Assembly (NCBI GenBank): GCA_000320545.1
Contig: ADNK01001003.1
Coordinates: forward strand, 20,698 to 84,697
Direction of reading: 5' to 3'
From: Bigelowiella natans CCMP2755
Taxonomy: Eukaryota > Protista > Cercozoa
DNA: 64,000 nucleotides
Shown here piece by piece: positions 16,594-50,701 of this stretch. The stretch's first letter is position 1; each line of letters opens with the position of its first letter. The notes beneath the pieces were generated by a model. That model saw only the letters and a list, made by a program, of their open reading frames with translations, was not told the DNA's origin and searched no databases. A program made the position numbers and the translations under genes.

Positions 16594-19500
16594 ATGGGAG
16601 TTGAAAGCTCGAAATCGAAGCTCGGGGATATTCCTGACATTGACCACTTGGACGAAGATCTCGTAGCAGTCAATAGCTTGAGTGCTCATGAGCTGACAGA
16701 TATTGCCGAAGCGAAGGTTATTCGAGAGATCTTTCAGTTTATGTAGCATATATGTGCTCTCAACTATCGATGCTACCAATATTTTCAGACCTTCAAGCCA
16801 CTTGGGTTGCCGAAGTTTTCGATTTCTGTTCCCGATGATATTGGAAAGGTGGTGTTATTGTTTGGCGAATGCCTGCCAATGAATTGTTATACTATGTATC
16901 GCGTGCATCTACGAAGAGTGCAGGGTGAGGATAGGTTATGCTTCTAAGCGTTGAAAGTTGACTTTGCCCTTTTCTGCACGTTTAATTTGTAATTATTACT
17001 CCATTGCGATTTAGGTGCTCGAGGGCAGGTCTATTATTGACCAGAAATCACTACATCATACTGTAGCGGACATATCACAGCTCAAGACACAGGCGTACTC
17101 CACACTCGAGTTTGTGAATTCTCTTCAGTTCAAGCAACATCAGATGAAGCGCATACACCTTGCCCTGCGGCGGGAGACTGAGCGCGTGGAGAAACGGAGA
17201 GAGTCGAAGGAAAAGGCGATCAAATCTGCGCTGCGGCAAAAAGTCCCATTGTTATCCATGGGGGCAAGGATGGGAATACAAACGTGCGCTGAGTTATTCG
17301 TCCAGAATGTGCAGATCCTGCACATGACAGGTATCGCTGGCTCTGACTACCTTCCTCGAACTCTGAGGACGTTAGACAGACTGCTTAAGATGATGACGCC
17401 ACTTTCGATATGCGACTCACAAGCCTTTTCACCCGATGTGGCCGTTGGCCTCGAGCCAGTACTACAAATGCTGCGTGACATGGCGGACGTGTCCAATCCG
17501 GAATATAAGGGCGCTTTCGTCAACCGAGGTTCTCTTCTTTGGTGTAGCGTGTGTACGACGTTTAATGCCTCCCGTTTTCCTGTTCCCCCATGATATTGAT
17601 AATCGAAATATCTCCTCCTCATTTCCCTCCTCTTCTTCCTCCTACTGCCACTCTCAGGAGTTGATGCAATGTGCCACTTCGCATTGGCGCGGGGTACAGT
17701 GTCCGACGTGCTCGCAGTAGTAGAAGTTCTTTACGACAATAATCGTGCTGAACTATTAGGTAAAAGTAGCGAACAGAAAACTACTACGATGATGATAAGA
17801 TGACGAGATATGATTTTAAACTGGGTGAAATGGAGATTAGATGAATTGCTTCGAACGATAATAATAAATGACCTTCATTCTAGGTACTACTGTGAAAATG
17901 ATAGGAGACAAGAAGAGGAACCAACAAAATGCAGATGGTACTGCAGCCCCTTCTTCATCTTCGTCTTCTCCCCCTCCTCCGCGGGAGTATCCGATTGGGG
18001 GCTTCTTCCGCTACATCATGAATTTCGAGCCCCAGGATCAAGGCATCTCTCTCAAGGCGTACGAGCAGAAGGTAGTGACCTTCAAGACGCTAGAGGACAA
18101 ATACTTATCGTGCCGGGGCCGCCAAGTATCCCTCCGCAGCGACTGTCACGCCTACGAGAAGTTCTATGCCGAGGTACTGGGCGACCGAATTGCTTTCCGC
18201 ACGCACGACCGTCGCTACCTCTCGGCGGGAGACGGGCAGATCGTGCTCACGGAGAGCCCAGGCAGCGCCGAAAAGTTCCGACTCGTTCCAGCGCCACGCA
18301 ACTCGAAATACCCTAATCACGTTGGGGTTCAGACTAACTACAAGACCTTCTTCACGTACCTCCGCGGTCAGGGCATCGTTACGCACGCAAAGCGCTACAG
18401 CGACAACTGCCTCTTTGATATCGAGACCTCCGATGTCGTTCTGGGCAGCGAGGCTGACGAGAAGGACGCCGCAGCCGCTGCTGCGCACTCTTTGAAACCA
18501 TTCCCAGAGAGCTCGGACGAGTTGATGGCTCGTTACGAGAAGGACTATCTTGACATTCGAGCAGACTCAAAGGTTTCCGGCCCTCTCTCTGCAGTCCTAG
18601 TTATGGCTAAGCTCGAGGCGCTCGCCCTTACAGAGGCGCCAGCGGATGATGACAAGGAGCAGCTGCCCGTGATATGCAAGCCGCTCTGCGTCACAGTCTC
18701 CCGCCGCACGATAGTGCACCTCTCTCACATTATCGAGCGCACCTCCACCTCCTACTTCGACTCTAAACACGCGGCACTCGTGTGCCGCAGTATCAACGAA
18801 TACGTCAACGAGATGTACATGCTGCTGGCCGCCCTACGCATCCTCAAGGTGCACCTTTACCAGACGGTCAGATCTCGACTCTCCACAGCGGAGCTCGACG
18901 TCCAGCCCGCAGAGGTGGAACGGCTTCGTGACTTGGTATATGGTCTTCTCAAGAAGCCGCCGGCCGCGTTTAAGCTGCCGAGCGCTGCTGATAGTGATGA
19001 AAACACAACAACCGAGGACGAGAGGGCCGCTATGGAGGCAGCGCAACGCGACGTACTCACGCGACTGAAGCGTGCCGTCCGGCATCAGGTGATGACCACC
19101 GCCTCGGAGGTGTTCGCGGCGGGCTTTGAGTTTTTCTACCCAAACGGATCGGACCAGGTCGGATATCTAGCCGACCTCCTCGACAGAAAAACGGAAAAGC
19201 GCCATTTGCAGAGTGCGCGGTCTGGCCGAGAGCTGTGGGCTTCTGCCTTGCAGAAGCTGGGCGCATCCGACGGGCTGCTCAGGTGCCTCGCGCCCGAGGA
19301 TGATGGCAGAGATTTTAAAACTGCAAATCGCGATTCGGACGTAGGCGCAAGAAGCAGTGAGAATGAGAACCTGACGGTCTCGCACGCAGAGGACAAGCTT
19401 CTGCAGCTACTGCTTTCTCGATTCGCGTCGTTTGGCGCGGGATCACAGCTGATGGATGAGTTGGAAGGGAAGGGCGTGGTCGATAAGAAGAAGTCGTTCC

Positions 19501-22500
19501 TCTCGGTCAATAAGGTCTTCACCTTGCTCCTCAACGTCTGCTCGGAAGAAGCATTCAATCTGCTCGAAGACATCAACAACCAGTTGCAACTGACCAACAG
19601 CGGGAGGGGTACCAACGGTCTGGACCTCACCGACGACAAGCTCTTCACTAAGTCACGCGGGGCGCTTGCGATCCTCGAGAACTTGCAGAAGCAGCTGCTG
19701 GGGCGCGCCGGTCTCTTCGTGCGACCAAGCAAGAAGGAGAGGGAGACTCAGCGGACAGACGGTGTCACCAACTCGACCGTTGGATTTTCGGGAGGGGGCA
19801 GCAGGAAGGCTCATCATCTTGCCTTACAGACGCTCGTTGGTTACGCAGAGGGCCTCATCCACCACGCATCCAAGATCCTCAACCGTGCGCTGGCTATTTC
19901 CGAGGCGACGTTCAACTGCGAGGCCTTGGGAATCATGGGGATAGCTCTCCTGGAGCACACCTTCATCGGGAGACTCGCCCATTCCCTTCTTGCAGCGCTG
20001 CCCATGTTTGCGATGCCGGAGCATCAGCTTCTCGCTTTGCGTTTGCTGCCGGAGCTTTCCCAGCTCACGGCAGCTCTGGATGGACTCGCCGGCGTTCTGA
20101 GCAGGATGCCGGGCGCGCACTCCCTGATGCCGATCCCGAAGAGGCTGACCTTCGAGAGCCGCCATCCATACCGGGGGGGCATAGACCGCAAGTTCCGCGT
20201 GCGCGTGAAGGGCGCCAAGCAGCTACGGATCGAGTTCGACAAGCGCTGTGCCACTCTCGCTAAGCACGACAGCCTGCAGATGATCGACAAGGCGCAGAAT
20301 CCCGTGCACCAGGCGATGCATGGACCCGCTGCAGGCCGCGACTCCAAGAACAACAGCGAGTGGCCTAAGGAGGAGATCGCGGTCAAGGGCGACACCGTTT
20401 TCGTGACCTTCAAAACGCAGAAGGCCTCGAAGGGCGACTTCGCTAACACGGAGCTAGGCTTCGGGTACCGGTTCACGGTGATCGGGTCCGCAATGGAGAA
20501 GCCAATGGGCTGGCTCACGGAATTCAATCAGACCGCACTGCATTGCTCCGGGCTGCTCCTTGCCACCGCCATCGGTGGCTCGCTGCCGTCGGTACGCGAG
20601 GTGCACTACCGCGCGAGGCTGCGGGAGCCTTGCATCCAGGGTGGTTTGTTGAAGACACACCCTCGCTACAATGAGCTCAGCGCGGACTTGTCCACCATGA
20701 TCGTCTCCCCCAGCGATCGGAATTACATTGATGGCCTTATTGCTGGCGGCGCTGTCATCCCCGCTGCGCACACCAAGCTGCTTGAAGATTTGGAGACGGG
20801 CAACGCAAACGGGAAGAAGATGATGAAGGCTTTGTATAAAGCGGGCGATAGAGTGACCTTGGGCCGTGGCAAGGAACAGGAGCTGGCAGAGTTGCTTTCG
20901 ATGAGATATTTTGCCCTCGTTCTGAGGCACACCGCGCAAACCGGCGAAGCTCTCAGCTTCCTCAACAAGAAAGTCACCCCGACTCCTCCGAAACTCCGTG
21001 CGGCCTACGAGCAAGCACTGCGTGTAAAGATGTCCGCACGGTCGTGGTATAAGGACGGCACCAACAGGGCGTCCAAGTTTGCGAAGCTCGTTGAGTACCA
21101 AAACTTTTTCGAAACGAGGTTCGCCTTTATGCGTCACGTGGCGCCCCACCCCCTCCTCACCCAAGCCCAAGCCGACGATGGCGAAGACATGAAGGTGCAG
21201 GAGGCAAAGGAAGAGAAAGGCCACGGAGAAAGTGAAGTGAGCTTTGAGAACTCACTCGAGGCAAAAATCATGGAGTCGCTCTCCTGCTTCTTCAGGCACG
21301 GCAAAGGAGCGCTGTCTGAAAAAGTGATTGACGACCTTGCCATCGCAATGATCACGCAGCGGGAGCGAGCCGTAGCCCGGCTGATAGGCATTAAATACTG
21401 GACAGAGTTTCTCAAGATGCAGGAACCCATGGCCCTCGAGCTGATATGCAAGCCGGCAGCCTCCGCGTTCGTCATCGAATCGGTGAAGGGCCCCCTCAAG
21501 AAGCAGCACCTCCTCGACGGAATCGAGTGCGCGGGAGGTTCCATCAACACGGAGATCTTCGAGTGCTACTACAACGAGGTGCTCCGCCGCCTGTTCCTCG
21601 TTGAGAAGGGCGCCCAGCAGCTCGAGCCGGAGAGGCAGAGCAGGCCTCTGATGATACGAAAAGGCCGTGGCATTGCCCGGCTCGCGGACCTCGTCGTACA
21701 GATGCGGATGGCAGAGGAGAGGAGAATTGGGTACGGCATCAGAGCAATGCTGATCGACCTATGCGCCAACCAGACGTATAAGCTCACTCCCAGCGATTTG
21801 AATGGCCTGGTGCGCGCTGGCGTCGTGAGCTTCATCGGCCAGGCGCTGCACGAAATCCTCCTTGGGTTCGCGGGGACGGACAGCAGCTTGCAGAGCATTC
21901 TCATGCATTATTCTACTACGGAGTCGGAAGAAGAAGGAGAAGGCGGAGATTCGGCTTCTAGCGGGGTGAGAACAAGAGCTAGTGTGTTCGCGTGTTGTTT
22001 TTGTTGTTTTTTGGTGGTGGTTATGGATGATTGAACGACTGATGAATTGGTCTATGGATGATTGAACGACTGATGAATTGGTCGTTGGTTTGATGCACAC
22101 ATGTTGTGCGTGCATGCGTGTGTGCCGGATTGTATGCGCGCGCCTGCACCCTTTTTCTCCTTCGAAGCAGTTTTCTTAAATTGGCCCTGTCGTTCATGCA
22201 ACTCAAACGCTTACTACTTCCTCCTTTGCTCACACCCCCTCAATCCCCATCCCCATCTGCTGCGTCTGCTTCATTTTGACCAGTCCTCGGTAGTCCTGCG
22301 GCGAAGGCCCCTGTACAATCTGTACGGGGTATTTTGCTTATTCCGCCTGCTACTGGCCGTGTCGGCTCAGCATTCCGACACCAGCCTGGAGTCAGCGGTA
22401 TCCCTCTCCTGCCCCTCTTCCTCCGGCCGTGCACATGCCCGGATGCTCAACGAGCAGCTCATGGACATCTTGATCAAGCACCTCTCGGTTCTCAACAAGT

Positions 22501-25500
22501 TCCGTTCACAATCGCTGGAGCACTTCGGTGATATGCCGGCGGCTGCAACGATGGAGGAGGCGCAGCAGCAACTCGCGATTGCTGCTGCGGGTGCCTCTGG
22601 CAATATGGCGTTGGTGAGCCCTAATGACAAGGGAGGCAGCAAGGACGCGATCGACGCAAGAGACAGCAGTAGCGATGGCGGGCTTCTCCTTACTGGCCAG
22701 GTCTCCGAGCAAAAGAAAAGCCCAGCTGTCTTGGCGTTCTGGCGACCCGACCTGCTTGACCCAGAGAACGTGAATAAAAAGGAGACGTCCATGAGCTTCG
22801 CGTACTCCTCCGACTTCGACGAGAATGGAATCATTTTCTTCCTTGGCTCGCTGCGGGGCAAGTGGCACAACCCTGCACTCAAGGGCCGAAACCGGGCTCC
22901 GCCACTGATCAAGCTCTCCGCGTCTTCTCTGAAATCCGACCCGCGATCGCTTTCGCTGCTGTGTGGCCGGACGGCGGGCCGGCTGTTGACCAAAAACGAG
23001 CAGAACGCGTGGTTCCAGCTATATTTCGGCAAGAACAAGCGCATCGTCCCCTCCAGATACACGCTCCGACACTACGCAAGCTACCATCAGGAGTGCCTGC
23101 GCAACTGGAAGTTCCAGGCCTCGAACGACGGCCAGGATTGGATCACCCTCAAAGAGCATGAGAACGATGATCTCCTTAAGGGGAAGGGGGGCACCGCGAC
23201 CTGGCCCATCAAGGTACCCGTGCAGCATCAGCACGGATGGTCGTACTTCCGCGTCATGGTCACGGGACCAAACTCCTCGGGGCGCAACTACCTTTGCCTT
23301 TCCGGCATCGAGATTTACGGTATCTTGCAGGGCAAGTTCCTCGACGAGGACCACGGAGACGCCGGGGACGCGATGGGCGGCGACTACTGGAACCGGCTAG
23401 CAGCCAGCGGCTGCAACTTCAACAACTCACCGACAACCTGTCTCGACGGCAATTCGAGCCAGCCGCTCCAGCTCCTGCGCCCCGATGATAATGACGGGTT
23501 CGGGACTGGCCTCGGCAAGAAGATCTACTCGAGGGGCAAGGTGAATCTGGAATTCAAGATCCCCAAGCTCGAGTTGAAGGACGGCGACACGAGCAAGAAG
23601 GGCCTTATCATCGGTGTAGTCAAGAGCTCCTTCCGGCCGAGACCCGGCACCAGCTTCTACGAGCACGGGTGGGGGATCATCGCCTCCAACGGACACAAGG
23701 CCAGGAACACCGAGACGAAGACGTACGGGGTCAAGTTCGCGAAAGACGCGACGATTGTTGTCCACCTCGACTTCACAGCCAAAACTGTATCGTTCAGTAT
23801 CAACGGTAAGAACAACGGCGTAGCATTTACTGACCTCGAGGGGCCTGTTGTCGCGGCAGTCTCCGTGGAGGTGGGCGCCGCGGTCACCATGACCAAGCAG
23901 AAGCATATCGTCTCTAAGAAGAAGAAAGAAGAGGGCGCCAGCGCCTTTGCTGTGAAGCCCAAGTTCAAGACGCGGAAGGTAACCCCCCTGCACTGGAAAC
24001 GAAGGCTCAAACAGACCGCTCTGCTTGGCTGCTCCCTTGGCTGGTTTCACCACAAGCTTCGGGACATTGGACCCCACGGCCGCACACGAATCCCCAAGAA
24101 AAAAGTGCTCAAAAGGGAGGGCGCCACTATTGATGGCAAGGAAGTGGAGGAAGAGGACCCGGAGAAGAAGGAGGACGAGGAAGACGAGGACGACTCTTCT
24201 GCTCCCGCGGCCCCTTCAACCGCCGACCTCGGCGACAAGAAATTCCTTGTGTTTTGGGACCAGTCGGTGAAGCAACAGGATTGCGAGATCCAAGACAATG
24301 GGCTCACGTACTGCAAGACTTCTGGCAGCAACAGCCAATGGCGTACCTGCCGACTCTCGGCATGGCTATACCCGAACCAGGGCACCTTCAAGTACTCGCT
24401 CAAGGTTGAGAAGAACTCGTCCAAGTGGATGTTCATTGGCGTCGTCGGACACGACTTCGTGAATTGGACGAGCTACGTCGGCAGCGTATCAAACAAGAGC
24501 TGGGGTTATAGCAACGGTGGAACGTCATCAAGCACCACGCGGCTATGGGGGACTGGCCAGCAGTCGGGCCGGTACAACTACCAGCAACAGACCAAGTTTA
24601 AGGATGGCGACGTCGTGACCGTGGAGTTCGACACTAACGCCAAGACAATAAGCTACCACGTCAATGACAGGAACCTTGGGGTCGCGTTCACAAACATCCC
24701 GCTGACGCAGAAGATGGCCATCGCCGTCACGCTGTACAACGTCGGGGACAAGGTGACGTACGTGCCGAAGAGCTCCGAGATCATCGGGGGGGAGGACGAC
24801 GATGAGGAGGACGAGGAGGACGAGGACTTCGAGTTCGAAAGCGACGACGACCTCGATAACCTCGAGACAGACACCGGGCTCGTGAAGCCGGAGGTGGAGC
24901 TCTACATGTATCAGGTCCTCGAGCTACTCCTCCGCTGCTCGGCCACGGCAAGCGTGCAACGACTGCTTTGCCACCACACCGACGCCATCCAGCTCATGCT
25001 TTCCATGCTGTATGCCCCCCACAGGGACGACGAGGTCGACGAGAGCGTGAACGAGCCGGTCTCGCGTGTCGGGCAGATCCTCGTGATTCGCATCCTGTCG
25101 CGAATCCTGCCTAATATTTCCCCTACTGACAAGAATGGCCCCCTCAAAGGGGACGGCCAGGCCCTTCTCGATGGATTCGTTGACATCATCGGCCAGTCGG
25201 CGCTGCGGGAAGTCCTCACGCAGGTACCGAGCGAGGGCAACGACGACGAGGACGAAGCTGGCAAGGGCTCCAAGGCATCATCGTCGGCGGCTGATAAGCA
25301 TGCTCTTGCTGAGACTCCGGTCCCCCCCAAGGACACGACGGTGCCTTCCGAGCTCGTCTCGCTGTGCCGCATCTTGCTTCACTCTCCTCGGTGGAGCAGC
25401 ATCGTCAACAAGACAATCGTCGACAATCTAACGAAGGTATCGCATCTACGATGGAACCCAGATGGCAACGATGAGTTAGCTGGCCAGGATGCTGTAGCGG

Positions 25501-39925: not shown

Positions 39926-39956
<31 letters not shown>

Positions 39957-41561
39957 GTTTGTATGTATATTAATTCATGAATACATTGAGAAAGGGGGTG
40001 GGGGGTTAGAGATCAGTAAGGCACTCATTATCATCATTACCATCATCATCATCACCATCATCACCATCATCACCATCATCACCATCATCATCATCATTCA
40101 TGATGTCGTCGTCATCATCATCATCATCATCATCACCGTCTTCAGGCCTCGGACTGGGGCTGGCGTTCATGATTCCCCGCGAGGCCGTGCGCACGGCCGC
40201 CTCTGGGATCTACAACCAGGAGCTCGTCGCCTTCCGTAGCAAGGAGCAACCCCGCGTCGACTTCTCTCAGCCAACGCTTAAGAACTTCTACTTCGAGGGC
40301 AACAATGTGGTGCGCAAGGTGACCAACGAGCGCTGCACGCTTCTATTCGACCCAGAGATCGAGGAGGGCGTACACGTCTTCGAGATCCGCTATCTGGATC
40401 CAGTAGATGATGAGAAGGACAAGAAGAAGGAGGCGGCCATGGGCAAGGACGGCAAGTCCTCCTCCGGCAGCACCGATAAAGGCCAATCAGAGGCCGGAAA
40501 CAACGGCGAGAAGCAGGGATCCTCGAAGGAAGAAGCAAAGAAATCGACCGTCAGTCCAATGGATACTAGCGTTTCCCACCCAATGAATAACTACATTGGC
40601 GTCGTAGATAGCAAGCACGCTGGTAGTGAACTGAATAAGTACTTGGGTGCTGTCGGATGGGCTTATTCCGGGGGATTCGTGTTTAGCAAGGGACGAACGC
40701 GCCGGTGGGGCATCCCTCTCAACCGCGCGGGCGACGTTGTTCGGCTTCGCGTTGACATGGAGGCCAAGCAAGTTCAGTACATCCTCAACGGGCAGGAGTT
40801 CCCGATTGTGCCAGATTACCAGCTTCCCGGCTCCGTGAAGCTCGCAATTTCCATGCAGCACAAAGGCTCGCGCTGTCTGGTTCGCACGGTCCACGAGGAG
40901 AAGGACGACGAGGACTCGGACTCGAAGAGCGGTATGCATCTCGACAAGGTCAACTTGCAGCCGAGCTACTTCACGGTCACCAACAACTTCACTAGGTTCC
41001 GGAAGTTGACCAACGCGCGGTCTACTGTGCGGTTCCTGCCTCTCGTCAAAACCGGGTCGCTCAAGTTCAGCATCAAGATTCTCACGCAGGGCCAATCGAC
41101 CCCCAACATGTACATCGGCTGTGTGCCGGCGTCGTGCGCCGCCAACCGGCTCAAGACCGACTATCTAGGCCGATTGGGTTACGCTTGGTGCTCGGGGGGG
41201 CAGAAATGGCGCACGGGGAGCTCCACCAGCTGCGGCGGCCATAAGTTCAGCGTTGGGGACGTCGTCGAATGTACTATTGACATGAACAAGAAGCATCTCA
41301 GCTTCGCGAAGAACGGCAAGAACTTGGGAATGTTTTACAGCGACCTCCCGAGCGAGGGCGTGTACCCAGCTTTCTCGGTCCACTACCAGAACGCGAGCGT
41401 GCAGGTCATTTACAAGATGGACGCCGACGTGCCCGGCATGGGCTCATCCTCCTCCTCGGATGAGCAACTTGATGAGAAGAAGAAGAAAGAGATGCTATGG
41501 AAGAAGGGCGTGCTGGTTGGCCCCTCCAACACCGTCAGCCTCAAGGTGCTGCTGCTCCCCT

Positions 41562-41652
<91 letters not shown>

Positions 41653-44600
41653 AGCAATTCTCCACCATCATGATCATTCTATCATATTTACCTCCTCCAA
41701 CCCCCTATGATTCTAAAGCATCGTCATCCTTATATTATTGTAACCTCCTCCTCCACATTCCTTTTCTAACGCAAGGTGGTTCCCTTGGAGGAAAAGAAGA
41801 ACCGTATGAAGAACATAAAAGGCGCTGTCGAAGAGCCTGCTGGCCTCACGCTCTCCATGATGATGCGTGTGGACACATCTGTCGGCATTGGTAAACGTGC
41901 CCCGTGCATGCTAATGAGCGCCAAGAGCGCGGTGGGTGAACCCATCTGCCGGCTGGACATGGACGAGACCAGCAACTTTACGCTCGATATCGGCGGCGGC
42001 GCCTCCACTTCTCGCTTCACCTTCGAAGATGCGGACGACGGCAAATGGCACCACGTGTGTGTGGTCCTCAATGATCAGAAGGTCGCTGTCAAGAAGGCAG
42101 ACGGCGGGGACAGCAACAACAACGCCTCCCCACACAGCAAGAAAGCGGGCGCCCCTCCCTCACTCGAAGATGCGCGGCAGCTTGAGGAGAAGGCTAAGAA
42201 GGGAGACGAGGAGGAGAAAGAAGAAGAAAAGGAGGAGGAGAGCCTGAAGGAAATCCAGGTCTTGGTTGCGCGTGTGTTCATTGACAACAAGCTGCAGAAG
42301 GCAGGGTATGTCGACGAGAAGTACGAACGGTTTCAGGCTGTCCTCAAGTCCCTCCCCAAGTTCTGCAAGGAGCCATTGCAGCTGCACTACGTTCAAGGGT
42401 ACACAGGCTACGTCAGAGAGCTCGCGGCCTATCTGTTTCCGATGAAATCCTCCATGCTCCAGTGCCTCACAGATAGCGGGGTCAAGTTCGCGGCCGAGTA
42501 CATGAACCGAGGGCGTGGCGGGCAGGAGAAGATCGTGACCTACACGTTTGGTGACATGTCAGGAAATGCTCGGCTGCCAGACGGATGGGAGGCGCACGGA
42601 AACGAGGACGTTCCAAGCAATCACTGGTTCGCCTTTAAGAACATTGGACTGGTGGAAATGCTCAAAAACAGCGCCAACCCGAAGGTGGCCTCGACGCTGG
42701 ACCAGGATATGATGGAAACAAAGGTCATATCCTGTGCCGCGCCCAAGTCGACGCTCTTCAAGGTCCCAGTGCCGCTCGGGTCCAAGAAAAAGGCTGCGAC
42801 GGACGATTCCGCGGCCGTCAAGAAGTTCGTAAGCTCGAATAAGTTCCAGCTCAAGGGCTCCATGACCTTCGCGCCCAGCGCGCAAAAGGCGGGCAGCTTC
42901 GACACGAGGGGTATCATCCACTACCTGGGGTCGAAGGCGATGAACTCGAGCTCCTACATGAACCCCGCATCGGGCAGCAGTAAGCTGGTGCTGGTACGCC
43001 ACTCGTTACAAGGCTCGCAATCCGCGCCGGAGTCTCACTTGACCAACTACAGCGCAGTCCCCGCGACCAACAAGAAGGGCCAGCCGAGCTGGATCTCGTT
43101 CGACTTTGGCGCGCTGATGGTGAAGCCCACGCACTACGCGCTGAAGCACTGGAACCAAGCCAATTACGCTCTTCGACACTGGTGCTTCGAGGGCTCCAAC
43201 GACAACGTCGAGTGGGAGCAGCTTAACAAGCACACAAACGATGCGTCTCTGTACGCCGCGGGCTCGACGAAGCTCTGGAGCGTCGCGCAGAATAAAGACC
43301 AGTACTTCTCGAAGTTCCGTGTGCGCATGACCGGGCTGAACTCGTCGCAGATGTGGAACATCTGCCTCTCTGGCTTTGAGATCTACGGCACACTCTCCTC
43401 GCCCGACGCGGAGGGAGCTGCGGCGCTCGAGGGGAAGGCGAAGGCCATCGAGATGTCCAATATGAAGCAATACACTGTGATCATGGACGTGATGCTGCCC
43501 TGCCTCCCCACCAACCGCCAGTCGCTCTTTACGTCGGCCCACGCGTACCAGGGCCGCCGCAACAACGCTTCAACAAGCTTCGCCATCGATTCGCAAGAGA
43601 ATGTGCTGGCTTCGCTCGCCTCCGAAGGAGGCGGCGGCGGGGGCGGTGGCGGAGGAGGAGGAGGAGGAGGTGGTGGAAACGGCATGGGAGACGAGCTTGA
43701 CGACATCGACTCTGATGACGATGATGACGACGAAGCAATCGTCGAGGTCCATTTCGTTCCACTACTTTGTATTACAAGACCATATTAAGATCAATCTTAC
43801 TTCTGTACCATCACTACTCTTGCTACTATTACTACTACTACTACTACTTCTACTATTACTACTACTACTACTACTACCGCCACTACTACTACATGACTAT
43901 TACTACCACCACCACCACCACCACCGCCACACAACCAACCCTTACTAATACCCTGCTATTTTGCTGTCAATGTCGACTTATAGGCCGCGGTAGCGAGCAG
44001 TAGTGAGCCTAAGAATGAGCTGGTGAAGCGGACTTTCGCAGAAGTCTTCGTTCGCCCGGACGGCAAAGTCGGCGTCGGTGCCGGCTCCGCCGCCGGAAAG
44101 TTCGGAGGCGGTAACTCCGCTGTGTTGTTCGCAGGCAAATGGCATCGCGTTGTCCTCACCTGCGACATGGAGAAGGGCTACTTCCAAGTCTACGTCGACG
44201 GGGAAACGGTGAGTGGGGTCGAGGGAGGGGTTGGGGGGATATATTCGCAGCATCCACCATCACTATCACCATCATCAACATCATCACTCATCAACGGTTT
44301 AAATCATTCAACCAGGCCATTGCGACCACGTTCAGCGACCACAGCGCGAAGTCACCTTTCAACCTCGGCAAGTACTTCACGCTCCTCGGCGATGAAGACC
44401 CTACACGGCGCCACTCGCTGCGCGCTGAGGTGGCCAACGTACAGGTGCGAGCGTTCGCGGTGAATCAGGGTATCGCGCGAGGGCTCGGCGTCGCGGGCGA
44501 CACACTCCTCGGCGCGGAGTATCTGAAGAGAATGACCAAGTTCCTGTCCAAGATGGGCTACCCAATTGGCTGGAGTATCAAAGCGCTCAACAAAACGGGC

Positions 44601-47600
44601 GGCAACGAGGCCCTCGCCTCCGATTGGATCATCGTAAACCGCGCTGAGCTCGAGGAGGAGGACCGCATGCGCCGACTGCGGATCGTGGCGGCGAAGCTGT
44701 CTCTGATGGGTTACCCGGTGACTTGGTGCATGCGAGCGCTCGAGACGAACAGCAACGACGTCTACGCTGCGACGCAATGGCTGCTGGATCAGGGTCTGGG
44801 AGGCGTCAAGGCGCACGATGCTGAGGAATTCAAGCTGCAGGATGATGAGCAGGCGGACATAAAGCGCGTCCTTGCCACGAGGCTCCAGGAAATCGAGATC
44901 GAGAAGAAGGTGCGAGAGAACTCGCTATTCCGCGTGCTCAACTCCACTTCCGAGCCTATCGATATTGGTCTCGACACGCTGATGATGCGGCCGGAGCCAA
45001 AGCAGCTCACAGACTTCTCGTCCATCAAGCGCATCCGCAATGTTCGCTCTATCGTGCAAAACGTGAAGCTGGCCAACGACAACCTCGCTGTCGTCTACTC
45101 GCGTTTGTGCGTCCTTGCGGTGCTAGAGAACTGGGCTGATGAGGAGCTCTCCAAGTTCTCGCCCTTTGCCGACTTCCACCCGGCCGCTGAAGGGAAAGGA
45201 GCTGCTGAAGATAGTAGCCAACGTCAACAACGACGCCCAGCTAGTACACACAAATCCCGCAAGAAGTATGCGGATGATGAGAACAGCTTTGCAGGCAAGG
45301 GAGGAGAGTCTACAGCCGAAGGGGCAAAGGAAGCAAAGAATAGCAAAAAATCTCGGCGACGGAAGCGGTCTGCGACTCCCTCCACCCCAGGAGCTGCCGC
45401 AGCAGCAACGGCCGCCTCCCGCGTGCTCGGGGACTGGGAGACCACCCAACAGCGCATCTTGGCCGATCCGTACAAGTGCATCGGCGACTTCCTGCAGCTC
45501 GTTGAGTTCTCCGCTCTTTCAGGCGGTCTTGACGTGCTGCGGATGGCTGTACATCGCACACTGCTCCGAGAAATGAAGACTCTAGAGCAGGAGAGGGCGG
45601 GGGGCAAGGTGTCGAGCATGGAGGAGATGTGCAGGCTGGCCCCCGTTTCCCGTGCGATGGTGTGCCAGGCGACGTATCACCTCGTCCAGATCTGCCAGCA
45701 ACCACGCAAGGGCGTGGACTCGGCGCGAACCGAGGGCGACATGCACACGAAGTGGAACGCCGCGATTGTGGTCTGGATCGTCAAGATATTCATCGACATT
45801 CTGAACGAGACGGGCGTCAGTCGGAAGGACAACTGGTACGCACGCTACCTGCTTTCCTCGGAGCTCGTGAACCTCATCTTCGAGTGCATATCGCTGATCT
45901 CCGGCCGCAAGCAGCTGTCGTTCGTGCGACTACTCTCGGCGCTAATTCGGCTGGATGTCGAGTTCGACCCGCAGACCTCAGCCACGCTCAAGGGGCTGAT
46001 GAACCGCACCTTCACCGTGCAGCAGCCCAAGAAGAAATTCACGACCTTCATGCAGGCTCTCATCGAGCTTATGCTCTCCGTAGAGCAAATCGAGATGCAA
46101 CGCGGCCGGCTTGTGGCAACAAATCAATCATCGGCAAAGGTCGCGGAGACCAAAGCCAAAGAAGGCGCGGACGAAAAGGTCGACAGCGTTGTCGTCGAGG
46201 GCAAAGACGGTGGTGGTACAAAGGCGGGCACTTCTTCCTCCTCGGCTTCAAGCGGGGCGGCAGTAATGCGGAGAACACAGTTCTTTGAGCACCAGTACGA
46301 CTTTGACACGAACGGCATTCTGTATTATCTTGGCCTCGAAGGCTCTTCCTCCGACTGGAGCAACCCTGCACTCTGCCAGACGCGTCCCGTACACGTCAGC
46401 TCCTCGCCGATGCTCAAGACCTCGCAGGCTAACACCGCAATCGTGGGCCGCTCCGCTGTCCGCTGCATGACCAAGCCGGTGGTGAAACCGTACTTCACGT
46501 TGGACTTCCACGGGCTCCTCATTGTGCCCACCTGCTACACCGTTCGCCACGCCGCACCTCGTGACTCCGAGGTCATGCGAAGCTGGGTGTTCGAGGGCTC
46601 GCTCAACGGAGAGTCGTGGGTCGTGCTCGACCGTCGTGAGAACTGCCAGGACCTGCAGAAGGCCGGTGATTCACACACGTGGAAGGTCGATTCCACCCAG
46701 GCGCTCATCAGCCAGATCTCCGCCGACGAGGAGAAGCGCAAGAAGGGCGAGAAGGTCCAGGTGCGCTACAACGAGGCGGGCGAGGCGGTGGTGCCAGGCT
46801 ACACGATGTTCCGTGTGCGAATGACGGACAAGAACTCGAGTCGCAGCTGGCATCTCGCGTGCTCTGGGTTCGAGATCTACGGATATGTGACGTTCCCAGA
46901 GCTGTCCGACAAACTCACGTGGGAGGAAGAGGAGATCGGCCGCTCCAAGGGGATGGAGCTCATCCGCTTCTCCAAAGTCATGGCACGACACATCGCCCGT
47001 GACGGCGTCTGGGAGGTCGTGCGGGCATCGCAGTCGCTGGCGTCCGGCCGCCACTACTTCGAGGTCGAGTTCATCGAGCGCGACCTCGACATGCAGGGCG
47101 TCTACGAGCGCTACAAGGGCGACGACATTATCCAGGTCGGTGTGGTGGACGCCAAGTTCAGCATGCAGCACAAGAACCTCCGCATCGGGAAGCCGCAGAA
47201 GGGCTGGGCCTACTCGTCGCGCGGCTGCACGGACCTCAACGACAACTACGGCGAGGCCTACGGACCGGGCGACTGTGTCGGTGTGGAGATCGATATGGAC
47301 GTGGGCACCATTGAGTTCTGGAAAAACGGCAAATCGCAGGGGCTTGCGTACGTCGATGTGACAGGGCCTGTCTACCCCGCGGTCGGCCTCTACCTCCAGT
47401 CGCCGCAAGTGAAGCTGGTGACGAAGAGCGTGGAGAAACTCAAGAAGTCACGCAACCAGAAGTGGTTCGACGACATCCTCCTGCTGCACGATACGCTGGA
47501 GATCCTCAACCACGGAGTCAGAGAAGTGGGAGACTCGGTAGGTGACAAAAAGATCATCACTGCAGGCAAGGGCAAGGGTAGGCCAGCCCTCCCTGCGAGG

Positions 47601-49432
47601 ATGGTCATGCGTGTGGCCGAGCAGTGCTTCCAGCTTGGAATGAACGAGCGCAAGGAGTCGGACGATGCCAACCAAGGCGATCTCGACCAGGGCGAAGATG
47701 ACGAAGATACCGACCTGAGCAGCGAGAGGAAGGCCGCGCGACTGCTTCAGGGGCAATCTGGCAAAGCGAAGGCCGAGCTATTCAAGGACCTCATTGAAGA
47801 GATCAACACCGTCCACCAGATCTTTACCCCCGGTCGCGACAAAAGCCTCGTGGATCTCGTCGACCAGCGTATCTGCGAGCGTCGCAGCACGGAGCAGCGC
47901 ACGGTTCAGGGCACCAACCTCACTCTCACCGAGTTCGATCCGACCGAGCGCGACCTCGAGTATTATCGGCTGTCGCAGCTGCCCAGGCGCGCGCTGCTCG
48001 TGCGTCTGGTGACCCTGCAGGTCCTCAACCGGCAACTCCGAACGACGCTGCCTCTCATCGACTTCTCCGTCCGCGGAGACGTGTCGCGGCTGGCCGGGCT
48101 GGTCCGTGGTGTGCGCAAGCTCATCTTCTGGGGCACCAAGGAGGGCATGTGGAAGGAAGCTCTGGCGGCCTCGCGCGGCCCAGGCGCTGACAAGCAGCCA
48201 GACCAGGTCAAGAACGCACTCACAGTGCCCCTCGACCGCTTTAAGGCGATGCGCTTCAAGGAGAAACTCAAATCGGACTCCCGCGCACGCAAGTCAATAT
48301 TCGGGCAGATGTTCTGCAAGCTCTACTCGCAGACCCCAGCCTTCTACCGCCTCGACCAGGGGGTGCGAGCCTTTTTGGTCGAGTTCCGGGGGGAGGGAGG
48401 AGAGGACGTTGGCGGGCTGTACCGCGAGGCGTTCCACCTCATCTGCAAGGAGCTGCAGCACGACGAATTCCGGCTCCTGCCGCTATTCGTGCCTTGTCCC
48501 AACAAGAAAGCGGATGCAGGGGAGAACCGTGACAAGTGGGTGCCGAACTCAGAATCTACCGAGCCTCTACACATCTCTCTATTCGAGCTGCTCGGTAAGC
48601 TTATGGGGCTGGCGCTCCGGACCAAGAACTCCCTCAACCTCGACCTGCCGCCCATCGTCTGGAAGCTGATCATACGCGACAAGGTCACGGACGCGGACGT
48701 GGAATCGATCGACGTCACCGCCTTCAACAGCGCGCTTGACCTGGCTGGCGTCGCATCGGCGATCCGGGCCGACGCGTCCGTGCCGAAGGACAAGCGTGCG
48801 CTGGAGTTCGAGAACCGTGTCGGAAAGCAATTTTTCGAGACGAGAAACGTGGTTGGCCGCAAGGTGCTGCTAGCTGCTGGCGACGGAACAAACGCAGTGC
48901 CAGGCGGCGGCGGCGACGACAGCGAAGTGAAGAAGACTCGGGTGAGCTGGGACAACTGGCGGGAGTACCGCGGCGCTGTGTCCAGATTCAAACGCACCGA
49001 GTTCGACGTGCAGATCGACTCGATGCGGCGCGGAATGGCCTGCGTGGTGCCGTTCGCCCTCCTTGGCATGTTCACGTGGGAGGAGATCGAGCGCGAGGTG
49101 TGCGGTGAGCGGAAGATGAACATCGACCTGCTCAAGAAGATGACCAAGTAAAAATGATATTATGGATTCGTCGCTGTCGTTAGATAGCACAATGAGAGGG
49201 GAGGGAGGGGTGGGGGGGGGGGAGGGGAATGGGAAGGATGGTGTTCTGGTAGTTTTAAAACGCGTAGAGGTCTTTGTTTTTCTTCTCTTCCTTTTCGACT
49301 CGTCCCCTCCTCCTACTATCACTTAATGATGTCCCTTCAACGGATTTGTTCAGATATGAAAACTGCTTCGCTTCCGACCAGCATATCAAAATATTCTGGG
49401 AGATGCTAGAGGACAGGTCGAGGGGGGAGATT

Positions 49433-49469
<37 letters not shown>

Positions 49470-50216
49470 ACATTGCATTCACGGTTTTCTCAAGAACACA
49501 TAAGAACATCTCATTTATATTGTCCGTTTTGCCTTCTAGATTCAACGAGGCAGAGAGAGCCCTATGGCTGAAATTCGTCTGGGGACGCTCAAGGTAAATA
49601 TCGGTGTGATGACGGCCATAACGCAGCAACAGTGTGCCTCCGCTACGACCTCGTGAAATGCCGGTGTGGTGGGGATCTTGCTGTTTGTATTGATGATGAT
49701 ATTGGTGTAATATGCTATGCTCGGTGGCGTAACTGTACGAGATTAGTTGAGTAATTATTCTCTTTGTGCTCTCCCCACAAAACAACCAGGCTTCCTGTGA
49801 GGGCGGCTGACTTCGATATGAAGTTCTGCATTCAGGTATGTGGTGGGGGTGTGTGTGCGTAGGCGTGTGTATGTGTGTGTGCGTGTGTGTGTGTGTGTGT
49901 GCTGTGCTGTTTTATCGCTGCTGTCCCTTTTCACTGGTGGGCGGCCAATTATTTGCATGTATATAGGTAGCAATGTTAACAGCATGTCTAAAAGATAGCG
50001 AGAGGGTTATATCGTCCTGACAATAATCTCTTCCTCATCTGTTATGTCTCGTGCTACTGCGTGTGTACGATGCTACTACTACTACTACTACTACTACTAC
50101 CAGACGCTTCGATCCGCAGAAGAAAGCCCAAATCCCGACGCGTTCTTGCCCATTGCACATACGTGCTTTTTCTCGTTGCAGCTGCCCAGGTAAAAACCCC
50201 ATAATAAAAATATGAG

Positions 50217-50260
<44 letters not shown>

Positions 50261-50701
50261 TTTATATGATATTATGTGTATATAGTAGCATGCAGGAAGT
50301 GGGGATTGGGGCGGGGTGCAGTAGGATGGGAGAGTCCAAACGGTTTAAAATAAAAATGCAACTGACATGATGGCGATGCTGCAGGTATTCTTCGCTCGAT
50401 GTGATGCATAAACGCGTCCTGTGGGCCATTACGAATTGTGAATCAATTGATGCCGACTTTGCTGCCGGTAAGCAAACGCCCCCCACACTGTAGTTAGTGT
50501 TTGCTGATGAGAAATTGAGGCGAATCAATAGCAGCAGAGGTTGCGCACATGCGAAAGTTCAGATGTAGAGTGCCATCCTATGATCTCCTCTTTAAAATCT
50601 GCATACATAACTTCTTCCCTCATTTTAATCGATTATTCCACTACTCCGTAGGCGAAATTCAAGGACCTTCTACTGCTGGCGACTCGGATGACGAGCATTA
50701 A
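16594..50701 (+). CDS. Giant HERC-like HECT E3 ubiquitin-protein ligase, 19 exons, ~10,200 aa (one frameshift at ~31620)
   Basis: Exons: 16594-16716, 16789-16848, 17015-17528, 17658-17759, 17884-21965, 22284-32446, 32773-35052, 35271-39443, 39588-39882, 40146-41545, 41776-43746, 43984-44208, 44316-49147, 49354-49416, 49540-49593, 49790-49835, 50104-50189, 50385-50467, 50652-50701. All junctions are GT-AG and phase-compatible. HECT motifs: FRGEGGEDVGGLYRE, LLPLFVPCPN, LKFVWGRSRLP, LPIAHTCFFSLQLPRYSS, CESIDADF. Confidence 0.9.
18070..18430 (+). other. Fascin-like beta-trefoil domain in the E3
   Basis: Three repeats of the type VTFKT...YLS...EKF, IAFRTH.RRYLSA...EKF and VGVQT..KTF...CLF. Confidence 0.6.
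20150..20490 (+). other. CUB-like domain of the ZZEF1/MYCBP2/HECTD4 type
   Basis: FESRHPY...V.GAKQL.IEFDKRC.T...D.LQ...WP...V.GD.V...GYRFTV. Confidence 0.65.
22022..22083. repeat. Perfect 31-bp tandem duplication in intron 5 of the E3 gene
   Basis: tatggatgattgaacgactgatgaattggtc occurs twice in tandem. Confidence 0.95.
22795..23335 (+). other. Discoidin/galactose-binding-like domain, copy 1 of 4 (HECTD1-type). Other copies at ~26860-27350, ~42890-43400 and ~46280-46890.
   Basis: Shared motif FD.NG++..LG...W.NPA...P..Y.LRH...LR.W.F+GSND...W..L..H..D..L...TW...FRV.MTG.NS...L.LSG+EIYG. Confidence 0.8.
27430..28540 (+). other. RCC1-like beta-propeller 1. Propeller 2 lies at ~32420-33850 and spans intron 6.
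   Basis: Repeated V.AG..H/FS+.L...G.VY.WG.N.YGQLG motifs. Confidence 0.9.
35590..41420 (+). other. Tandem array of ~10 SPRY/B30.2-like domains (~15 in the whole protein)
   Basis: Recurring G.H.+E+...YIG+V...GWA...G.K...Y...GD++.V.+D+...+.F..NG..LG.AF..+P...PA+S units. Further copies at ~23440, ~24250, ~31230, ~34040/34820 and ~46910. Confidence 0.85.
40026..40136. repeat. (CAT/CAC)n trinucleotide tract in intron 9
   Basis: Seen directly in the sequence. Confidence 0.9.
43822..43930. repeat. (CTA)n/(CCA)n trinucleotide tract in intron 11
   Basis: Seen directly in the sequence. Confidence 0.9.
48220..50467 (+). other. HECT catalytic domain, catalytic Cys codon at 50164-50166
   Basis: AHTCFF motif in exon 17; the domain is spread over exons 13-18. 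Confidence 0.92.
49435..49466 (+). repeat. Poly-G run (~32 nt) in intron 14
   Basis: Seen directly in the sequence. Confidence 0.9.

What the first reader, a model, noticed from the sequence alone, without database searches (positions are those of the whole stretch)
16594..50701. A ~10,200-aa (~1.1 MDa) HECT E3 ligase, about twice the size of human HERC1/HERC2
Seen: 19 phase-compatible exons sum to 30,602 nt (30,603 after one 1-nt repair), i.e. 10,200 codons plus stop, ending in a HECT domain with an intact catalytic Cys. The ORF track splits this into many separate proteins. Known: large HERCs (~4,800 aa) combine RCC1-like domains with HECT, and HERC1 has one SPRY domain. Inference: the combination of ~15 SPRY, 4 discoidin-like, 2 RCC1-like, LamG, fascin-like, Tudor, SH3 and 4 UBA-like domains suggests a multivalent sensor platform coupled to ubiquitination. 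It could act as an intracellular recognition or defence ligase, or as a quality-control hub, and I do not recognise this architecture.
Basis: partly seen in the sequence, partly recalled or inferred. Interest (0 to 1): 0.85.

Follow-up and report, generated by a model that had tools for sequence, protein, structure and literature searches.

The report
Giant 10,200-residue HECT ubiquitin ligase gene
The alga Bigelowiella natans has one intact, expressed 19-exon gene for a 10,200-residue (1.12 MDa) HECT ubiquitin ligase, about twice the size of the largest HECT ligases described; it is a known kind of enzyme in an unusually large and heavily decorated form.

Summary
Observation confirmed. It has 19 exons (16594-50701, + strand), 18 GT-AG introns and 30,602 nt. 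Three independent runs, two RNA and one DNA, carry an extra A behind 31613. The "1-nt repair" therefore corrects an assembly error. The result is 10,200 codons plus stop, 1.12 MDa.

RNA contigs from two studies splice introns 6 and 7 exactly as predicted. A genomic contig from a relative is colinear from the shared start (MG[VI]ESSK) to the stop at about 49% identity. It lacks all 18 B. natans introns, so the exons form one coding unit.

Domains found: 16 SPRY, 4 discoidin-like, 2 RCC1-like, two UBA pairs, weaker LamG-, fascin- and Tudor-like matches, a CUB-fold module that Pfam lacks, and a complete C-terminal HECT domain with Cys10149. No SH3 was found.

The HECT domain is closest to HECTD3 and HERC2 (class I). 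Half-size relatives (4,200-5,900 aa) occur in other protists, and this genome holds at least 15 paralogous HECT loci. The scan had already reported an 8,100-aa HECT gene elsewhere in this genome.

Verdict: a new, record-size variant of a known ligase class. Function (substrates, defence or quality control) is untested.

The parts
16594..50701 (+). Whole gene from ATG to TAA: 19 exons, 18 GT-AG introns, 10,200 codons plus stop
   Evidence: Model rebuilt. It is colinear with the ortholog contig from aa 1 to aa 10199.
16594..16716 (+). Exon 1. The start MGVESSK fits an N-myristoylation-like MGxxxS pattern
   Evidence: The ortholog starts MGIESSK and the third species starts MGLESSK at the aligned position. 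In-frame stops lie upstream.
16789..16848 (+). Exon 2
   Evidence: The exon 1/2 and 2/3 joins read continuously in the ortholog; the 2/3 join also reads continuously in L002.
17015..17528 (+). Exon 3
17658..17759 (+). Exon 4
   Evidence: Frame-compatible GT-AG sites. This is the least well supported exon because ortholog similarity is weak here.
17884..21965 (+). Exon 5 (aa 267-1627): fascin-like module, helical scaffold and CUB-fold module
18072..18278 (+). Fascin-like beta-trefoil (weak)
   Evidence: Pfam Fascin E 0.0058, below the cut-off. Homolog P0023 has Fascin at E 4.6e-10 at the aligned place.
20127..20498 (+). CUB-fold beta-sandwich with ESxHPY motif, set in a helical scaffold (19368-20780). 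No Pfam family covers it
   Evidence: AlphaFold2 mean pLDDT 80.6. Foldseek matches CUB domains with probability 1.0. The module is shared by more than 100 large proteins, and ten of them scanned gave no Pfam hit.
22284..32446 (+). Exon 6 (aa 1628-5015), 10,163 nt in the window and 10,164 nt in reality
22959..23321 (+). Discoidin-like (F5/8 type C) domain 1
   Evidence: Pfam 33 bits, E 7.7e-8; self-HMM; 38% identity to the HECTD1 SUN-like region.
23532..24755 (+). SPRY domains 1 and 2 (23532-23891 and 24378-24755)
26994..27344 (+). Discoidin-like domain 2
   Evidence: Self-HMM. Pfam is weak at 19.9 bits.
27537..28535 (+). RCC1-like domain 1
   Evidence: Pfam WD40_RLD E 7e-61 and RCC1 repeats.
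30768..31190 (+). LamG-like module, copy 1, with a Tudor-like motif at 31110-31190 (weak)
   Evidence: Internal paralog of 43984-44561. Pfam Tudor E 0.007-0.04, below the cut-off. The fold prediction failed.
31368..31720 (+). SPRY 3. It contains the assembly error: an A is missing behind 31613
   Evidence: Extra A in X15, X18 (RNA) and X2 (DNA). The domain is complete once the frame is restored. The ortholog frame is continuous here.
32009..32248 (+). UBA-like pair 1
   Evidence: Self-HMM match to the pair at 44559-44801. Pfam UBA E 0.014.
32447..32772 (+). Intron 6 (326 nt)
   Evidence: Spliced out in RNA contigs of two runs (X15, X18) and retained in DNA run X2. Absent from the ortholog.
32773..35052 (+). 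Exon 7: RCC1-like domain 2 (32866-33849), SPRY 4 (33985-34200) and the start of SPRY 5
35053..35270 (+). Intron 7 (218 nt)
   Evidence: Spliced out in X15 and X18 and retained in X2.
35271..39443 (+). Exon 8: end of SPRY 5 and SPRY 6-12 (starts at 35637, 36123, 36771, 37278, 37797, 38397, 38946)
   Evidence: Pfam SPRY E 3e-67 with 5 stretches; self-HMM.
39588..39882 (+). Exon 9: first part of SPRY 13, which continues in exon 10
   Evidence: SPRY 13 is complete only across intron 9. The ortholog is continuous here.
40146..41545 (+). Exon 10: end of SPRY 13, SPRY 14 (40538-40882) and SPRY 15 (41051-41407)
41776..43746 (+). Exon 11: weak LamG-like match (41962-42126) and discoidin-like domain 3 (43039-43389)
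43984..44208 (+). Exon 12: first part of LamG-like module copy 2 (43984-44561, across intron 12)
44316..49147 (+). Exon 13: UBA pair 2 (44559-44801), discoidin-like domain 4 (46440-46883), SPRY 16 (47043-47417) and the HECT N-lobe (from about 48438)
   Evidence: Pfam UBA_7 E 2.8e-7, SPRY, and HECT E 3e-22.
49354..50467 (+). Exons 14-18 (49354-49416, 49540-49593, 49790-49835, 50104-50189, 50385-50467): the rest of the HECT domain
   Evidence: Each exon aligns to the ortholog's uninterrupted C-lobe, which matches Pfam HECT positions 195-302 at E 1.3e-27.
50164..50166 (+). Catalytic cysteine codon (Cys10149) in LPIAHTCFFSLQLP
50652..50701 (+). Exon 19: acidic tail and TAA stop
   Evidence: The ortholog ends with a similar acidic tail.

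Best explanation
The region is one nuclear gene of Bigelowiella natans: 34.1 kb, 19 exons, + strand. It encodes a single 10,200-residue, 1.12-MDa class-I (HERC/HECTD3-like) HECT ubiquitin ligase.

Shown. The reading frame is intact, because the only frameshift is an assembly error. The gene is transcribed and spliced. It is conserved end to end in related species.

Inferred from established HECT biochemistry. The C-terminal HECT domain takes ubiquitin from an E2 onto Cys10149 as a thioester and passes it to substrates. The 9,600 residues in front of it act as the recruiting platform. They comprise a helical scaffold with a CUB-fold insert, 16 individually conserved SPRY domains, 4 discoidin-like domains, 2 RCC1-like propellers and several LamG-like modules. 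Each can hold a different partner. The two UBA pairs would hold ubiquitin or already ubiquitinated clients, which would favour chain extension.

More speculative. The conserved N-terminal MGxESSK suggests N-myristoylation, which would give the ligase a membrane-attached end.

Compared with a 5,333-aa homolog that has the same ends, the extra roughly 4,700 residues form a central block. That block holds the second RCC1-like domain and the array of 13 SPRY domains, and it is flanked by a duplicated LamG-like plus UBA module. The size therefore most likely arose by internal duplication.
For: Model. It reproduces to the base, with 19 exons, 18 GT-AG introns and no stop after the extra A. That extra A behind 31613 is present in two RNA runs and one DNA run.

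Transcription. Introns 6 and 7 are removed at the predicted bases in RNA contigs from two studies and are kept in DNA. One RNA contig of 12,151 nt and one of 8,572 nt run on 5.9 kb beyond 36999. RNA-type runs from four studies hold 0.81-0.89 of the words of 30800-36800, against an exonic share of 0.91.

Conservation. The ortholog contig (ENA ERZ28548055, 37 kb, genomic) is colinear from the start codon to the stop. A strict chain covers at least 84% of residues at 49% identity, and the contig has no intron at any B. natans site. A third species is colinear for aa 41-2893 at about 50% identity. An Amorphochlora fragment is 69% identical.

Domains split by introns or by the assembly error become complete only in the joined model: SPRY 3, 5 and 13, LamG-like copy 2 and HECT.

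Domain and family support. Pfam matches for HECT, SPRY, RLD, F5/8C and UBA_7 are above cut-off. The HECT domain is closest to HECTD3 among solved structures (E 1.9e-18) and is 33% identical to HERC2 over 517 aa. The genome is B. natans, because JGI model Bigna1 126110 matches another contig of G000 at 100% identity.
Against: Only 2 of the 18 introns were seen directly in RNA.

No full-length 31-kb transcript and no protein has been seen. Raw reads of the one true RNA-Seq run were sparse: 5 reads from about 6% of the run.

Exon 4 and the exact ends of exons 3-5 have weak ortholog support.

The ortholog contig carries many frame jumps. I take them for long-read indel errors, but I cannot prove that the ortholog is intact.

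Every functional statement is inference from domain families. That covers substrates, use of the UBA pairs, myristoylation, and whether the RCC1-like domains bind GTPases.
Confidence: 0.85

Rival explanations
1. The locus holds two or more adjacent genes on the same strand. For example, an N-terminal scaffold gene, a SPRY-array gene and a smaller HECT gene could only look like one gene because their frames can be joined.
For: Only introns 6 and 7 were seen spliced. The public JGI model of a paralog (Bigna1 126110, 2,121 aa) covers only the front part of another giant HECT locus. Searches found no database protein covering this locus.
Against: In the ortholog the coding sequence runs across all 18 intron sites with no intergenic gap. 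A third species reads through the intron 5 site in one frame. Several domains are complete only across exon joins. One RNA contig of 12 kb spans exons 6 to about 11. All gaps between exons are 72-326 nt with GT-AG ends, which is too short for a terminator plus a promoter.
Confidence: 0.06
2. The gene is real, but the 10,200-aa chain is not the main working product. Internal promoters, alternative splicing or polyadenylation, or proteolytic processing would give shorter proteins, such as a HECT-less scaffold or a shorter ligase.
For: Nothing here measures transcript ends or protein size. Contig depth differs somewhat along the stretch in X18 (37 versus 74). Half-size homologs work with far fewer modules.
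Against: No contig retained an intron or ended at an intron in the stretch examined. The full order of modules is conserved in relatives, as expected if the whole chain is selected as a unit.
Confidence: 0.08
3. The gene is a decaying pseudogene broken by the frameshift near 31613.
For: The window sequence as given has a frameshift inside SPRY 3.
Against: A DNA run and two RNA runs all carry the extra A that restores the frame. There is no other stop in 30.6 kb. The locus is expressed and spliced. The ortholog is conserved throughout.
Confidence: 0.01

Closest known systems
Large HERCs (animal HERC2 and HERC1), described as 'the largest HECT-containing proteins' at close to 5,000 aa (PMC6692442)
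   Same: C-terminal HECT domain, 33% identical to HERC2 over 517 aa. More than one RCC1-like domain. SPRY and UBA occur in HERC1. The CUB-fold module matches HERC2 residues 3601-3708 at 29% identity, E 2e-9.
   Different: Twice the length. 16 SPRY domains instead of 0-1. No WD40, CPH, MIB/HERC2, ZZ or DOC domain was detected. It is therefore a class relative, not an ortholog.
HECTD3, and class I HECTs as defined by Grau-Bove et al. 2013 (PMC3673628), including the protist families HECTHe1 and HECTEx1 with Laminin-G3 plus SPRY
   Same: HECTD3 is the best solved-structure match to the HECT region (E 1.9e-18, against 3e-11 for the next). According to that paper, SPRY is exclusive to class I HECTs.
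   Different: No phylogeny was made here. HECTD3 is 861 aa with one DOC domain. The survey reported B. natans as having many HECTs but little domain diversity, which this gene contradicts.
Uncharacterised 4,200-5,900-aa protist HECT proteins: P0024 (5,333 aa), P0039 (5,858 aa) and Nothophytophthora RLN02302.1 (5,199 aa); also Reticulomyxa filosa 'ubiquitin protein ligase' (2,315 aa)
   Same: Same N-terminal helical and CUB-fold module, and a HECT domain at 33-40% identity. P0024 also shares the discoidin, SPRY, RLD and UBA blocks in the same order.
   Different: About half the size. P0024 lacks the central block of about 4,700 aa that holds RLD2 and the SPRY array.
Other giant HECT genes of B. 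natans already noted by this scan (s1-730537, about 8,100 aa with tandem Tudor modules; s1-721135)
   Same: Same genome, same enzyme class, very long exons. One search shows at least 15 paralogous HECT loci, with open frames up to 4,201 aa.
   Different: Different loci and different decorations. This one is the largest so far and the one with the SPRY array.
HECTD1
   Same: All four discoidin-like domains match the Sad1/UNC (SUN)-like region of insect HECTD1 at 30-38% identity.
   Different: The HECT class and the rest of the architecture differ. There are no ankyrin or MIB domains here.

Membership tests
HECT-type E3 ubiquitin ligases (Pfam PF00632) | A complete HECT domain of about 350 aa at the C-terminal end of the protein | tested here: met
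   Profile positions 2-204 lie in exon 13 (E 3e-22). Exons 14-18 align at 67-83% identity to the ortholog's continuous C-lobe, which matches profile positions 195-302 at E 1.3e-27.
HECT-type E3 ubiquitin ligases (Pfam PF00632) | Catalytic cysteine in the C-lobe motif (LPxAHTCFNxLxLP-like) | tested here: met
   LPIAHTCFFSLQLP with Cys10149 at window 50164-50166. The motif is identical in the ortholog. The Cys lies 51 residues from the end because of a 16-aa acidic tail.
HECT-type E3 ubiquitin ligases (Pfam PF00632) | Forms a ubiquitin thioester and transfers ubiquitin from an E2 | not testable with these tools
   Needs a biochemical assay.
Large HERC subfamily (HERC1/HERC2) | More than one RCC1-like domain together with HECT (definition in PMC6692442) | tested here: met
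   Two RLDs: Pfam WD40_RLD E 7e-61 and 5e-55, and self-HMM.
Large HERC subfamily (HERC1/HERC2) | The signature accessory domains: WD40 for HERC1; CPH, MIB/HERC2, ZZ and DOC for HERC2 | tested here: not met
   None was reported in any Pfam scan of the exons or tiles, even at E up to 1.
Class I HECTs (Grau-Bove 2013) | The HECT domain groups with HERC1/2, HECTD3 and KIAA0614 in a phylogeny; SPRY is present | tested here: inconclusive
   Similarity ranking favours HECTD3 and HERC2 and SPRY is present. No tree was built.
SPRY domain (PF00622) | Significant match to the SPRY profile | tested here: met
   Pfam hits above cut-off in six exons. A self-built HMM finds 16 copies, 14 of them at 70 bits or more.
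CUB domain fold | CUB-type beta-sandwich fold | tested here: met
   AlphaFold2 model with mean pLDDT 80.6. Foldseek probability 1.0 to C1s, MASP and neuropilin CUB domains, TM 0.5-0.69 on the target. This is fold level only: 11-17% identity and no Pfam CUB hit.
   Tudor: E 0.007-0.04, below the cut-offs, with a motif-like stretch conserved in the ortholog. The fold prediction was unusable at pLDDT 35. SH3: no hit at all.

The most novel reading that the evidence does not exclude
This is the largest single-chain ubiquitin ligase yet seen. It would be a membrane-tethered (N-myristoylated) 1.1-MDa hub. Its 16 individually conserved SPRY domains and other lectin-like modules would each recruit a different client. 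One HECT active site would then serve a whole set of substrates, for instance in organelle or endosymbiont surveillance in a cell that houses a complex plastid. The lineage would have built it by internal duplication of a 5,000-aa ancestral ligase.
Probability: 0.25. Interest if true: 0.7.

Novelty: new variant of a known kind. Interest (0 to 1): 0.5.

Why it matters
Reviews call HERC1 and HERC2, at about 4,800 aa, the largest HECT-containing proteins (PMC6692442). This gene doubles that size. It is expressed and it is conserved across species, so the size is selected and is not an annotation artefact.

It offers a natural extreme case for asking how one HECT active site can be served by dozens of recognition modules. 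It also shows how such ligases grow, namely by internal duplication of a module block.

The 2013 HECT survey scored B. natans as poor in domain diversity (PMC3673628). At least for this ligase family, that probably reflects truncated gene models. A paralog's JGI model is visibly only a fragment.

The CUB-fold ESxHPY module is shared with HERC2 and with more than 100 large proteins, and none of the ten homologs scanned matches any Pfam family. It is a candidate new domain family.

Tried and rejected
1. A crude dynamic-programming gene finder gave 16 exons. It invented an intron to jump the frameshift and chose a donor inside a (CT)n(GT)n microsatellite. I replaced it with the ortholog-guided model.

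2. The search for homologous proteins with the 3,183-aa open stretch, the 566-aa stretch and exon 13 found no database protein from this locus and no close ortholog within the allowed length ranges. It found only domain-level hits: HERC2, HECTD1 and Reticulomyxa. A blank here says little, because of the length filter and the word prefilter.

3. I could not scan P0024 or fetch its contig, because it exceeds the 5,000-residue limit. I compared it locally instead.

4. The AlphaFold2 model of 30768-31367 (LamG-like plus putative Tudor) came out at pLDDT 35 with a 5-row alignment. It gives no conclusion on Tudor.

5. The ESM Atlas look-up of 24756-26990 scored 0.83 or less, which is a lead only. 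It pointed at helical scaffolds such as HUWE1 DUF908/DUF913. I did not use it as evidence.

6. The many hits of aa 1010-1190 to ankyrin-rich giant proteins first suggested ankyrin repeats. The fold shows a CUB-type sandwich instead.

7. I first thought RCC1-like domain 2 was split by intron 6, because its Pfam match starts at profile position 85. RLD1 starts at the same profile position inside one exon, so this is not a split.

8. Raw RNA reads (X24) were too sparse to show junctions.

9. The joined 10,200-aa sequence was not sent to any remote search or fold tool. All remote searches were done exon by exon, by reference. The joined translation was used only in local scripts, for the frame check and for local alignment to sequences already fetched.


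Full report
What is there. On the + strand between 16594 and 50701 lies a chain of very long open stretches. One has 3,183 codons, and their G+C content is 55-60% against about 44% in the flanks. Pfam scans of the stretches found two RCC1-like domains, many SPRY domains, an F5/8 type C domain, a UBA_7 domain and the first two thirds of a HECT domain at the end of the last long stretch. I used splice-site inspection and comparison with an ortholog to rebuild the gene model. With one added base this gives 10,200 codons plus TAA, no internal stop and a mass of 1,123 kDa.

The frameshift. The only break in the frame lies inside SPRY domain 3, near 31613. I laid four public runs on 31000-36999. An extra A behind 31613 is present in contigs of two RNA-derived runs (X15, X18) and in a DNA run (X2). 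The window therefore carries a 1-nt assembly deletion and the real gene is intact. With the A in place, SPRY 3 is a complete domain. The ortholog reads through this place in one frame.

Transcription and splicing. Six runs from four studies hold 0.81-0.89 of the sampled words of 30800-36800. The exonic share of that stretch is 0.91. In X15 and X18 the contigs skip 32447-32772 and 35053-35270, which are GT..AG and match the predicted introns 6 and 7. The DNA run X2 keeps both. That result also shows that X15 and X18 are RNA. One X15 contig is 12,151 nt long and extends 750 nt upstream of 31000 and 5.9 kb beyond 36999. An X18 contig of 8,572 nt reaches equally far downstream. The raw RNA-Seq run X24 gave only 5 reads from about 6% of its data, so the expression level is unknown and may be modest.

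Comparative evidence. A full HMMER search with the domain-less N-terminal 1,200 aa found fragments at 55-69% identity. One of them is from the chlorarachniophyte Amorphochlora amoebiformis. Two fragments led to contigs. The first is a 37-kb genomic contig, ENA ERZ28548055 (L001, L003-L005). It is colinear with the whole gene. It starts at a shared start (MGIESSK against MGVESSK) and ends at a shared end (...AHTCFFSLQLPRYSS...DADFAAGE plus an acidic tail and a stop). A strict chain covers at least 84% of residues at 49% identity, and the ortholog coding sequence spans about 29.6 kb. At every one of the 18 B. natans intron sites the ortholog's coding sequence is continuous. That fixes the exon joins and rules out intergenic gaps. 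The contig has divergently oriented neighbour genes upstream, so it is genomic and not cDNA. It also has many frame jumps, which I attribute to indel errors in a long-read assembly (its name says 'pilon'). A second relative (L002, Logan SRR32280804) is colinear for aa 41-2893 at about 50% identity. It reads through the intron 5 site in one frame and starts with MGLESSK. The genome itself is Bigelowiella natans: JGI model Bigna1 126110, a paralog, matches another contig of G000 at 100% identity.

Architecture, as found by Pfam on exons and on 340-aa tiles and by HMMs built from the gene's own repeats. In order along the protein:
- A conserved MGxESSK start.
- A weak fascin-like match. Pfam gives E 0.006, but homolog P0023 has Fascin at E 4.6e-10 at the aligned place.
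- A helical scaffold with an inserted beta-sandwich.
- Discoidin-like domain 1, SPRY 1-2 and discoidin-like domain 2.
- RCC1-like domain 1, followed by weak LamG-like matches.
- A LamG-like module with a Tudor-like motif, then SPRY 3 and a UBA pair.
- RCC1-like domain 2 and SPRY 4-15.
- A weak LamG-like match and discoidin-like domain 3.
- A second copy of the LamG-like module plus UBA pair.
- Discoidin-like domain 4, SPRY 16 and HECT.

No SH3 domain was found. The Tudor assignment stays weak: Pfam E 0.007-0.04, and the fold prediction failed. The 16 SPRY domains are on average 25% identical to each other. Each aligns to its positional counterpart in the ortholog at about 50%, against 23-24% off the diagonal. 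The array is therefore old, and each unit is kept for itself.

The N-terminal module. The part of the N-terminal region shared most widely (aa about 910-1190) matches more than 100 large proteins, and ten of them that I scanned have no Pfam family. An AlphaFold2 model built with a 32-row alignment reached mean pLDDT 80.6 and pTM 0.75. It shows long helices followed by a beta-sandwich. Foldseek places the sandwich with CUB domains at probability 1.0. The alignment consensus carries an ESxHPY motif. The same stretch matches HERC2 residues 3601-3708.

Relatives and class. Among solved structures the HECT region is closest to HECTD3 (E 1.9e-18, against 3e-11 for the next hit). It is 33% identical to HERC2 over 517 aa. 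According to the eukaryote-wide HECT survey, SPRY is exclusive to class I HECTs. That class includes the large HERCs, HECTD3 and protist families with Laminin-G3 plus SPRY (PMC3673628). The gene has two RCC1-like domains like a large HERC, but none of the HERC1 or HERC2 signature domains. I therefore file it as a class-I-like HECT and not as a HERC1/2 ortholog. No tree was built. Proteins of 4,200-5,900 aa carry the same N-terminal module and a HECT domain at 33-40% identity. They come from unnamed protist assemblies and from the oomycete Nothophytophthora. P0024 (5,333 aa) shares both ends and several blocks in order. It lacks the central block of about 4,700 aa that holds RLD2 and the SPRY array, and that block is flanked by the duplicated LamG-like plus UBA module. 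This points to growth by internal duplication. In the B. natans genome the HECT N-lobe finds this locus once at 100% identity. It also finds at least 15 paralogous loci, several within open frames of 2,700-4,200 aa. The scan had already reported an 8,100-aa HECT gene on other DNA of this genome.

How it most likely works. The catalytic step is inferred from HECT biochemistry: ubiquitin passes from an E2 to Cys10149 and then to the substrate. Recruitment by the many beta-sandwich and propeller modules, and ubiquitin binding by the UBA pairs, are inferences from what these domain families do elsewhere. The MGxESSK start is conserved in three species and fits the N-myristoylation pattern, which suggests a membrane-attached end. 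This is speculation. I found no evidence for or against a defence or quality-control role.

Novelty. Reviews call HERC1 and HERC2 the largest HECT-containing proteins (PMC6692442). Literature searches for giant or largest HECT ligases, and for HECT in Bigelowiella, found nothing of this size or architecture. The enzyme class is known and uncharacterised relatives exist, so this is a new and extreme variant of a known kind.

Limits. The joined protein was never sent to a remote search or fold tool. All such searches were made exon by exon, by reference. The joined translation was used only in local scripts, for frame checks and for alignment to sequences already fetched. I could not establish how the public annotation treats this locus, because no database protein from it was retrieved.

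Noticed in passing
window 31613: The assembly lacks one A here. Two RNA runs and one DNA run all carry it. Any gene model made on this assembly will break the ligase in two at this point.
   Followed up: yes
window 19368-20780 (CUB-fold at about 20127-20498): A helical module with a CUB-fold insert and an ESxHPY motif. It is shared by more than 100 large eukaryotic proteins and by HERC2 residues 3601-3708. Ten homologs scanned had no Pfam family. It is a candidate new domain family.
   Followed up: partly
G000:C3665:11341-31500 (another contig of the same genome): JGI model Bigna1 126110 (2,121 aa, no HECT) matches C3665:11341-19400 at 100% identity. A HECT N-lobe lies at C3665:30430-31500 in a 3,989-aa open frame on the same strand. 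The public model is probably only the front part of another giant HECT gene.
   Followed up: partly
L001/L003/L004/L005 (ENA ERZ28548055 contig_26939_pilon) and L002: The ortholog in one relative has none of the 18 B. natans introns over about 29.6 kb of coding sequence. A third species keeps intron 1 but lacks introns 2 and 5. Intron content of this gene therefore differs strongly between relatives.
   Followed up: partly
window 16594-16614; L001 about 5741; L002 about 56: The N-terminus MG[VIL]ESSK is conserved in three species and fits the MGxxxS N-myristoylation pattern.
   Followed up: partly
window 41553-41650, 43830-43930, 49419-49468, 50070-50101, 50228-50258, 32507-32520: Several introns of this gene consist largely of microsatellites and homopolymers: (CT)n(GT)n, (TAC)n, long poly-G, (TA)n and poly-C.
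   Followed up: no
window 43625-43680: A coding GGN repeat gives a run of about 17 glycines followed by an acidic run. The ortholog has the same feature.
   Followed up: no
window 7065-7619 (+) and 668-4345 (-): An actin-family exon (Pfam Actin E 6e-34, profile positions 58-192) lies upstream. A 1,226-aa open frame on the minus strand in a G+C-rich stretch has no Pfam match.
   Followed up: no
window 32261-32373: Two 18-21-nt stretches match a different, very deep contig (depth about 1,200 in RNA run X15) with loose ends on both sides. This is probably a chance match or a short shared repeat.
   Followed up: no
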